Positions 30,400 through 32,130 of a stretch of 64,000 nucleotides of DNA are shown in pieces. Positions within the stretch are counted from its first letter, which is position 1. Each line of letters starts with the position of its first letter. Both the position numbers and the translations under genes were made by a program. A model generated the notes under the pieces. The model worked only from the letters and a program-made list of their open reading frames with translations, was not told the DNA's origin and ran no database searches. The stretch spans positions 8,875,451 to 8,939,450 of the forward strand of contig NW_026943824.1 of assembly GCF_035594765.1 (NCBI RefSeq), given 5' to 3'. The stretch comes from Anolis carolinensis (lineage: Eukaryota).

Positions 30400-30667
30400 A
30401 TGGATCGCAGAGTTTCTTATTTTAGGAGAGAGTCATCTTTACCTCCCCGAAGACTATCTGTCCGAAGGAGATCTTCATCCCCAAGGAGACCTTCGTACCG
30501 AAGGAGATCTTCATCCCCAAGGAGACTTTCATACCGAAGGAGATCTTCATCCCCAAGGAGACCTTCGTACCGAAGGAGATCTTCATCCAGAGGAAGATCA
30601 TATGAGAGGAGGAAGTCATCTGTCAGAAGGAGATCATCTGCTAGAAGATGGTCATCGGCATCATCAG
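30400..30667 (+). CDS. PDZD9: Candidate PDZD9 first coding exon encoding an Arg/Ser-rich protamine-like domain
   Basis: Kozak ACCATGG; 89 codons plus 1 nt, then CAG|GTAACT donor in phase 1, matching the phase-1 acceptors downstream. Confidence 0.65.
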
Positions 30668-32130
30668 GTAACTATAACACTACAATATATTTAAACCACC
30701 TGTAAAACACTCAGCCTCAATTTCCTGCCTTTTCTTTTCCACAAATGCCACTATTTTGTTCACAGATAATTGTTGCATTGTTTTACAAGCTTGTGGTTAG
30801 AATGGGAATGTTAGATGTTATGTTCCACGTATGTGTTTTTGATCAATCATGACTTTGCTCAGGAGCCCCCGGTGGCGCAGTGGCTTAAAGCCTTCTTACT
30901 TGAAGGTTGGGTTGCTGACCTGAAGGTTGCCGGTTCGAATCCAACCTGGGGAGAACGTGGATGAGCTCCCTCTATCAGCTCCAGCTCCATGCGGGGACAT
31001 GAAAGAAGCCTCCCGCAAGGATGGTAAAAACATCAAAACATCCGGGCGTCCCCTGGGCAACATCCTTGCAGATGGCCAATTCTCTCACAGTTTCTCAAGT
31101 CGCTCCTGACACGAAAAAAATGACTTTGCTGACTAATGTTAGGATTGTAATTGATGGTACCTTGGCTGGCATCCAAAGTACTGTGTAATGAATCTGACAT
31201 GCCCAAGGAGGTTTTAGGGACTCATATTTCTCCAACTGTAGTTTCTAGTGTTTGGGGGAAATGGTTTTTGAAATGAAGATGAAGCAAAATGAATTTTGGA
31301 ACATAATCCCATTATTGTTTTCTCTACAGAAGATGAGGACACCATATTCTCTGCTTCTGATGACTCTTGGGCTTGGGATTCAGGTGAGTGGCAGGAGATT
31401 TGGGATTTCAGTGCCACAAAATTTGGCAACGGTTATCGGATTGTGTTTGTGCTACTAATGCTATCTTGAGAAGGAGTTCCGCATTACAATTGTTTAGATA
31501 TTACAAGTCCCCCCTGCCCTATCTTTGAATGGAGGATACTGTTTCACCACTCTTAACATACTGTCATGCTTGGAGAAGCCAGGCAGCAAGATAAGACAAT
31601 AAGGAGAAGGGGGACAGCACACCTGGAACGGGTGTCGGATTCAGCACAGGCAGCCCCCAAGTTACAAACAAGATGGGTTGTGTAGGTTTGCTCTTAAGCT
31701 GAATTTATATGTAAGTCGGAACAGGTACATTTTAAAAAGTGTAACTCCATCCAAATATATACAGGAGTTACAAACATCCAATTTACAAACGACTATATAC
31801 CTTCATGGCATTTCACAGACAACACGTAGAAGAAGTATAGGTTGCTTACCTGTAACCGTATTTCTTTGAGTGTTGATCTGTGAAATTTGCACAGCCCCGC
31901 CCGTCCTCCCCGCTATGTCATGCCTTGTTTTCAGTTGCTATCTTGGCGGCTGAGAACTGAGGCGTAGCCCCGCCCTCAGGCTTATATTGTGTATGGGGAG
32001 AAGGGGCGGGGCTACCGCCATTTGCTGCTCCTTCAAGCTCTAGAACAGGGGTCCCCAAACTTTTTAAACAGAGGGCCAGTTCACAATCCTTTGGACCATT
32101 GGAGGGCCGGACTATAGTTGGCCACCAAGC

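What the first reader, a model, noticed from the sequence alone, without database searches (positions are those of the whole stretch)
30400..31383. Protamine-like Arg/Ser tandem-repeat exon appears to be spliced in frame onto PDZD9
Seen: a Kozak ATG opens 89 codons containing 33 Arg and 28 Ser, built on a 36-bp repeat (RRRSSSPRR[P/L]SY) with three SPRR motifs. It ends at a phase-1 donor. A 54-nt acidic exon with consensus splice sites follows, and both join in frame to the PDZ exon at 36953. Known: human PDZD9, as I recall, has only about 10 residues in its first coding exon (also phase 1) and is testis-enriched. SPRR/SPKK and RS repeats bind DNA or RNA under phosphorylation control in sperm histones, protamine-like proteins and the hepadnavirus core tail. 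Inference: a lineage-specific protamine-like/PDZ chimera that could tether sperm chromatin or nuclear speckles to PDZ ligands.
Basis: partly seen in the sequence, partly recalled or inferred. Interest (0 to 1): 0.8.

Follow-up and report, generated by a model that had tools for sequence, protein, structure and literature searches.

The report
Squamate PDZD9 kinase-site repeat exon
In lizards and snakes the tiny first exon of the little-studied gene PDZD9, whose protein is found in mammalian sperm, has grown into a long, spliced, arginine/serine repeat made almost entirely of PKA-type phosphorylation motifs, which probably gives the protein a phosphorylation-controlled charge switch rather than a borrowed protamine.

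Summary
The window is Anolis carolinensis PDZD9. The five-exon, 401-aa model is in frame and equals RefSeq XP_062820511.1. Spliced contigs from four studies show junction 30667>31330, and one continues into the PDZ exon at 36953.

The interpretation changes. This is neither Anolis-specific nor a protamine chimera. All 8 squamate loci examined (gecko, cordylid, lacertid, anguid, two anoles, two snakes) carry the exon, 199-1120 nt, always phase 1, with no stops; four are unannotated. Turtle, alligator and rhea have the same promoter, ATG and donor around only 11 codons, so the domain is an internal repeat expansion of the ancestral exon.

SPRR is not conserved, RS dipeptides are depleted, and no Arg run exceeds 3. 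The conserved unit is R-R-x-S: Ser follows the Arg pair in 101 of 108 distinct units, with a saturated third codon position.

Best reading (inferred): a disordered array of 6-45 PKA-type sites acting as a charge switch on a sperm PDZ scaffold. Testis expression, phosphorylation and localisation in lizards are untested; tuatara was not sampled. I found no paper on this domain, and the scan had not noted it elsewhere.

The parts
30253..30270 (+). Conserved upstream (promoter-side) block, about 150 nt before the ATG; resembles an RFX half-site or MYB site from memory only
   Evidence: Single match in the window, 0.03 expected; a near-identical pattern is found in 8 of 10 loci including turtle, alligator and rhea; alignment
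30304..30399 (+). Transcribed 5' leader (ends of contigs, not a mapped start site)
   Evidence: Contigs begin at 30304 (X9) and 30358 (X5), with no joint from upstream; conserved across sauropsids
30400..30667 (+). PDZD9 coding exon 1: 89 codons, Arg/Ser-rich, 18 overlapping RRx[S/T] sites in 13 Arg blocks, phase-1 donor
30462..30588 (+). Youngest part of the array: 36-bp tandem repeat, 3.5 copies, built on an 18-bp unit
31330..31383 (+). PDZD9 exon 2: 54 nt, acidic, phase 1-1; an equivalent 51-63 nt exon lies in all 8 squamate loci
36953..37126 (+). PDZD9 exon 3: first half of the PDZ domain, with the GLGL loop; internal in-frame ATG at 36967
   Evidence: loose end matches its start
37246..37438 (+). 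PDZD9 exon 4: second half of the PDZ domain
   Evidence: Pfam PDZ_2 E=0.00035, below the curated cut-off
39844..40360 (+). PDZD9 exon 5 to the stop codon; AATAAA at 40356-40361 overlaps the stop

Best explanation
Shown: this is the first coding exon of PDZD9. In the ancestor of squamates (or of lepidosaurs) its 11 codons were expanded from within by tandem duplication of short in-frame units, and lineages have re-expanded it with different unit lengths. Selection keeps an Arg pair with a Ser two residues later. Inferred: the product is a disordered, strongly basic N-terminal arm carrying 6-45 PKA-type (RRxS) sites on a sperm PDZ scaffold. Unphosphorylated, the arm (+31 in A. carolinensis) binds an anionic surface, most likely the inner face of a sperm membrane or the protein's own acidic segments (-31 in total). 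cAMP/PKA, or another basophilic kinase, phosphorylates many sites and cancels the charge (arithmetic: +31 falls to between about +4 and -5), releasing or repositioning the PDZ domain in a graded way.
For: Splicing. Same exon in all 8 squamate loci, 199-1120 nt, phase 1, no stops, repeat periods 15-153 nt and all multiples of 3. Outgroup homologue of 34 nt with the same leader, ATG and donor: nhmmer E 1.4e-15 alligator, 3.7e-10 turtle, 0.013 rhea; the Gopherus RefSeq N-terminus matches it. None of 95 non-squamate proteins has more than 1 RRxS before the PDZ. RRx[ST] is 3.7 to 7 times the shuffle mean in all 9 species, p at most 0.001. Anchored on Arg pairs alone, Ser is at +2 in 101 of 108 distinct DNA units, codon-position entropy 0.21/0.28/1.90 bits against 1.4-1.9 at all positions of the neighbouring codons. 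RRxS/T is the PKA consensus (PMC7124472). Boar PDZD9 was identified in sperm membrane vesicles (PMC3295773) and as a sperm phosphoprotein (PMC8322956). Lizard sperm respond to a cAMP-raising agent or capacitating medium (PMC11083041).
Against: No lizard tissue, protein, phosphosite or localisation data: the runs' tissue is not on record. RRxS is shared by other basophilic kinases (PMC7124472), so PKA is not singled out; a hydrophobic +1 residue is common but not dominant. The exact charge balance holds only in A. carolinensis; other species are not balanced. Repeat units share ancestry, so the counts are not independent. The AlphaFold model is low-confidence throughout (mean pLDDT 43.8), so disorder of the arm is only consistent with it, not shown. 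Membrane evidence is from pig, whose protein lacks the arm.
Confidence: 0.5

Rival explanations
1. One reading: the arm binds DNA or RNA like a protamine or RS domain and tethers spermatid chromatin or nuclear RNA bodies to PDZ ligands, under phosphorylation control.
For: 23-38% Arg and net +14 to +70; polybasic tracts often import into nuclei and bind nucleic acids (general knowledge); testis kinases do regulate a protamine-like protein in flies (PMC10164148).
Against: No Arg run above 3, SPRR and [ST]Px[RK] not conserved, RS/SR depleted and RSRS absent. Contigs of run X9 differ at two of the three SPRR prolines, P28L and P52S (contig-level, no matching DNA run). The whole protein is neutral or acidic in most models. 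Anolis has a separate protamine entry (PMC13756071). The pig orthologue was found in membrane vesicles.
Confidence: 0.2
2. The array is a docking or buffering platform rather than a charge switch: phosphorylated sites recruit phospho-readers such as 14-3-3, or soak up kinase activity, or the basic and acidic blocks drive assembly into a sperm structure such as the fibrous sheath or midpiece.
For: Many equivalent sites at 5-6 residue spacing; site number varies from 6 to 45; a [RK]-x-[LI]-[ST]-F word resembling a PP1 docking motif occurs in 5 of 9 species.
Against: The PP1-like word is absent in both anoles and Hemicordylus and differs in position; residues after the Ser vary freely; no binding data.
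Confidence: 0.2
3. The array is a tolerated by-product: one ancestral Arg/Ser hexapeptide amplified by slippage in a weakly constrained N-terminus, with little function.
For: Length varies nearly sixfold and repeat units turn over between lineages; the A. carolinensis and A. sagrei arrays already differ in length and units.
Against: Frame and openness are kept in all 8 loci while other frames gather stops; the Ser codon is invariant at positions 1-2 and saturated at position 3; no sampled squamate has lost the array.
Confidence: 0.08

Closest known systems
PDZD9 (C16orf65) of amniotes, amphibians and coelacanth
   Same: Orthologue by sequence and by position between MOSMO and UQCRC2; same PDZ and C-terminal motifs; same phase-1 first exon.
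   Different: First exon 66-373 codons of RRxS repeats instead of about 11; second exon acidic and retained, whereas its counterpart looks decayed in Carettochelys, alligator and rhea.
RefSeq XP_062820511.1 (A. carolinensis PDZD9, 401 aa)
   Same: Identical gene model. Podarcis, Paroedura, Hemicordylus and Lerista database models also include the arm.
   Different: An automatic model with no description of the arm; the exon is missing from the models of A. sagrei, Elgaria, Candoia and Erythrolamprus although it is in their DNA.
Multisite PKA-regulated disordered regions (CFTR R region; from my own knowledge) and MARCKS-type electrostatic switches (from my own knowledge)
   Same: Many basophilic kinase sites in a low-complexity region whose charge falls on phosphorylation.
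   Different: No homology; site density is far higher (one Arg pair per 5-6 residues) and built from tandem DNA repeats; phosphorylation is not demonstrated here.
Protamines, protamine-like proteins, SR-protein RS domains, hepadnavirus core tail
   Same: High Arg and Ser content; likely phosphoregulated.
   Different: No long Arg clusters, no RS dipeptide repeats, SPRR not conserved, no winged-helix or RRM domain; part of a neutral or acidic 400-700 aa protein; arose in place.

Membership tests
PDZD9 orthologues | PDZ domain and C-terminal motifs homologous to PDZD9 | tested here: met
   exon translations are identical to RefSeq PDZD9
PDZD9 orthologues | Position between MOSMO and UQCRC2 | tested here: met
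   Peptidase_M16 exon at 51208-51423 minus; MOSMO-like first exon near 24.5 kb minus, recognised from its translation; same order in loci
Protamine (P-type) | Small stand-alone protein | tested here: not met
   Spliced into a 401-aa protein; no read-through product seen
Protamine (P-type) | Arg-dominated with long Arg clusters | tested here: not met
   Arg 23-38%, longest run 3, RRRR absent in 9 species
Protamine (P-type) | Packs sperm DNA | not testable with these tools
   Needs localisation and binding assays
Protamine-like (H1-derived) proteins | Linker-histone winged-helix domain | tested here: not met
   No Pfam hit on exon 1; only PDZ families on P0001; no secondary structure in residues 1-120 of a low-confidence model
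SR proteins / RS domains | RS dipeptide repeats | tested here: not met
   RS/SR below shuffle mean in all 9 species (7 against 20.8 in A. carolinensis); RSRS/SRSR absent
SR proteins / RS domains | RRM domain | tested here: not met
SPKK/SPRR DNA-binding repeats (sperm histones, hepadnavirus core tail) | Conserved repeated [ST]Px[RK] motifs | tested here: not met
   SPRR 3 in A. carolinensis, 1 in A. sagrei, 0 in seven others
Multisite PKA substrate region | Repeated RRx[ST] consensus, conserved | tested here: met
Multisite PKA substrate region | Phosphorylated by PKA in cells | not testable with these tools
   No squamate phosphoproteome available; pig PDZD9 is a sperm phosphoprotein at other sites
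Exon-shuffled chimera | Exon acquired from another gene, without a counterpart in outgroups | tested here: not met
   Homologous 34-nt exon with the same leader, ATG and donor in turtle, alligator and rhea

The most novel reading that the evidence does not exclude
A squamate-wide innovation in which a sperm PDZ scaffold carries a continually re-amplified array of PKA sites whose copy number (6 in Hemicordylus, 18 in the green anole, 45 in a snake) tunes the cAMP threshold or timing of sperm activation, so that repeat length is an evolvable dial that may track sperm storage or sperm competition.
Probability: 0.2. Interest if true: 0.75.

Novelty: new variant of a known kind. Interest (0 to 1): 0.47.

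Why it matters
PDZD9 has almost no functional literature (PMC8049494 / bioRxiv 2020.09.14.295923 says so). A clade-wide, selected array of kinase consensus sites points to its regulation and offers a clean natural experiment: 11 codons in turtles, crocodilians and birds against 66-373 in squamates, with the promoter and splice sites unchanged. It is a tractable example of a regulatory disordered region built from coding tandem repeats, gives a candidate cAMP effector in lizard and snake sperm, where capacitation-like signalling is barely known (PMC11083041), and corrects four truncated gene models. The gene model itself is already in RefSeq and the function is untested, which caps the score.

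Tried and rejected
Separate 101-aa read-through product (stop 30705): no contig depth in the intron, no AATAAA/ATTAAA in intron 1; rejected as the main form. Acceptor at 33492: stop in the needed frame, no support; it lay outside the stretch laid. Start at ATG 36967: good context, but downstream of a good-context ATG on the same spliced contigs; a minor short form is not excluded. Upstream CpG-rich stretch 28400-28900 as promoter: no joint to exon 1 and the contigs there differ by about 5%, suggesting other repeat copies. Pfam on exon 1: nothing. ESM Atlas on residues 1-108: no usable hit. AlphaFold: pLDDT 43.8, uninformative beyond a PDZ-like strand/helix order at about 125-217; no fold search was run on it. 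RFX2 control: Pdzd9 is not in the held supplements of two Rfx2-knockout papers; left as an unsupported lead. A TSSK consensus recalled from memory could not be confirmed. Varanus and Malaclemys loci were unavailable. The big representative-protein search was not run: it holds no names or context, and the absence claim rests on three outgroup loci and 95 proteins. Following the operators' notes, the spliced model was searched exon by exon by reference and then by the database's own id P0001; the joined typed-sequence search was left out. Read laying was kept under 6000 letters, so 31383>36953 is seen as a loose end, not as a tabulated joint.

Full report
Identity. The last exon of the gene, searched by reference, returned P0001, named PDZ domain-containing protein 9 of Anolis carolinensis, 401 aa, 100% identical; its accession is XP_062820511.1. 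Neighbours are a MOSMO-like first exon near 24.5 kb (recognised from its translation), UQCRC2 (Peptidase_M16) and CRYM (OCD_Mu_crystall). The window has no N.

Observation. The five exons 30400-30667, 31330-31383, 36953-37126, 37246-37438 and 39844-40360 have AG/GT ends for the introns, phases 1, 1, 1, 2, and sum to 402 codons including the stop. Each exon, translated alone, is found in order in P0001. The model is therefore already annotated. An older RefSeq model (P0026, XP_008122630.1) used a different N-terminus from the ORF near 35758.

Transcript evidence. Fourteen runs guessed to be RNA hold the exon; their tissue is not on record. Four, from four studies, were laid on 28300-31900. All four show a 662-nt GT..AG skip, which is 30667>31330. 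Run X5 has a loose end behind 31383 whose 30 letters equal the start of the exon at 36953. The X5 contig is 531 nt against 530 expected from 30559 through exon 4; those of X13 and X9 are 1053 and 1108 nt against 1047 to the stop codon. Two intron bins have zero depth. Contigs start at 30304 and 30358 with no upstream joint. These are contigs, so they show presence, not level, strand or start site.

Distribution. Database models of Podarcis, Paroedura, Hemicordylus and Lerista PDZD9 also begin with an Arg/Ser arm followed by an acidic stretch. In fetched loci the exon is present in all seven other squamates, including four whose models omit it: A. sagrei 316 nt, Erythrolamprus 1120, Candoia 718, Elgaria 214, plus Paroedura 271, Podarcis 409 and Hemicordylus 199. 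All are stop-free, end in a phase-1 GT donor and are followed by an acidic phase 1-1 exon of 51-63 nt. The leader and the donor align well while the middle does not; repeat periods differ by lineage (15, 18, 30, 33, 36, 54, 60, 138, 141, 153 nt) and are all multiples of 3.

Origin. Between MOSMO and the PDZ exon of turtle, alligator and rhea no 40-residue window holds more than one RRxS, and none of 95 non-squamate proteins has more than one before the PDZ. A profile of the squamate upstream region nevertheless finds the same region in alligator (E 1.4e-15), turtle (3.7e-10) and rhea (0.013). There the aligned ATG opens 11 codons plus one base and then a GT donor. The Gopherus RefSeq protein starts with the matching peptide, and the first four codons in Paroedura and turtle are identical. 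The models of those three outgroup species start elsewhere, so their use of this exon is inferred from alignment. The arm is thus an internal expansion of the ancestral first exon, not an exon from another gene. Tuatara was not found, so squamate against lepidosaur is open.

What is conserved. SPRR occurs 3 times in A. carolinensis, once in A. sagrei and never in seven other species. RS/SR dipeptides are fewer than in shuffles in all nine, and no Arg run exceeds three. RRx[ST] is strongly enriched in every species, for example 18 against 3.7 in A. carolinensis and 45 against 8.3 in Erythrolamprus. Of 130 Arg blocks, 126 have Ser or Thr two residues after an Arg pair. Because amplification of one unit could produce this, I anchored on Arg pairs only and looked at codons: Ser in 101 of 108 distinct units, codon positions 1-2 nearly fixed and position 3 saturated, whereas neighbouring codons vary at all positions. 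I read that as purifying selection on R-R-x-S; the units are related, so it is not a formal test. RRxS/T is the reported PKA consensus and is shared with some related kinases (PMC7124472).

Function. No paper on reptile PDZD9 or on this arm was found. Pig PDZD9 was identified in membrane vesicles of capacitated sperm (PMC3295773) and among sperm phosphoproteins (PMC8322956); a sub-threshold bull-fertility signal lies in a PDZD9 intron (bioRxiv 2020.12.11.421354). Lizard sperm show cAMP-linked motility changes (PMC11083041). In A. carolinensis the arm is +31 and the remainder -31; phosphorylating all 18 sites would bring the arm to about +4 to -5. From this I infer a phosphorylation-controlled electrostatic switch on a sperm scaffold (0.5). 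The exon structure, splicing and expansion origin are well supported; every step of the mechanism is inference.

Verdict. A real, transcribed, already modelled exon whose comparative anatomy appears undescribed: a new variant of a known gene, working like a multisite kinase-regulated disordered region, and not a member of the protamine, protamine-like or SR families. Interest 0.47.

Limits and rules followed. The spliced model was searched exon by exon by reference and then by the stored id P0001; the joined typed search was left out. The reads call was kept under 6000 letters. The scan's earlier notes near this place concern other features, and a word search found no similar note.

Noticed in passing
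window 35716-35994: The ORF in this intronic element supplied the N-terminus of an older RefSeq PDZD9 model (P0026, XP_008122630.1), joined to the exon at 36953; the current model does not use it. The stretch was not covered by the reads laid.
   Followed up: partly
window 30253-30270; L005 7044-7061; L007 9425-9442; L006 11245-11262: An 18-nt block upstream of PDZD9 is conserved from lizards and snakes to turtle, alligator and rhea; it resembles an RFX half-site or MYB site from memory. No support was found in two Rfx2-knockout papers' held supplements.
   Followed up: partly
L001 4592-4907 and 7967-8020; L002 13991-15110; L008 8779-9496; L009 7202-7415 and 8148-8207: Intact PDZD9 exons missing from the protein models of A. 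sagrei, Erythrolamprus, Candoia and Elgaria; the snake first exons are the longest (373 and 239 codons).
   Followed up: yes
L005 about 7680; L007 about 10059; L006 about 11835: Remnants resembling the Gopherus second exon, apparently decayed in Carettochelys, alligator and rhea; likely the positional counterpart of the squamate acidic exon (weak match, E 0.0056 for the turtle acceptor region).
   Followed up: partly
window 30482 and 30553: Contigs of run X9 differ here, changing two of the three SPRR prolines (P28L, P52S); may be alleles or repeat-copy differences, with no DNA run to check.
   Followed up: partly
exon 1 of L002, L004, L008, L009 and protein P0034: A [RK]-x-[LI]-[ST]-F word resembling a PP1-docking motif occurs in five of nine squamate arms but not in the anoles or Hemicordylus.
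   Followed up: no
PDZD9 proteins, PDZ to C-terminus: The body of PDZD9 is acidic in sauropsids, amphibians and coelacanth (median net -9 to -17.5) but mildly basic in most mammals (median +4).
   Followed up: no
window 28400-28900: CpG-rich stretch with several CCAAT boxes between MOSMO and PDZD9; contigs laid there differ by about 5%, suggesting a transcribed repeat family rather than the PDZD9 promoter.
   Followed up: partly
window 40356-40361: The AATAAA signal overlaps the PDZD9 stop codon, and contig lengths suggest a very short 3' UTR.
   Followed up: no
proteins P0010, P0013: Viper PDZD9 (Crotalus, Vipera) carries a second, His-rich tandem repeat in the last exon, another repeat expansion in the same gene.
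   Followed up: no
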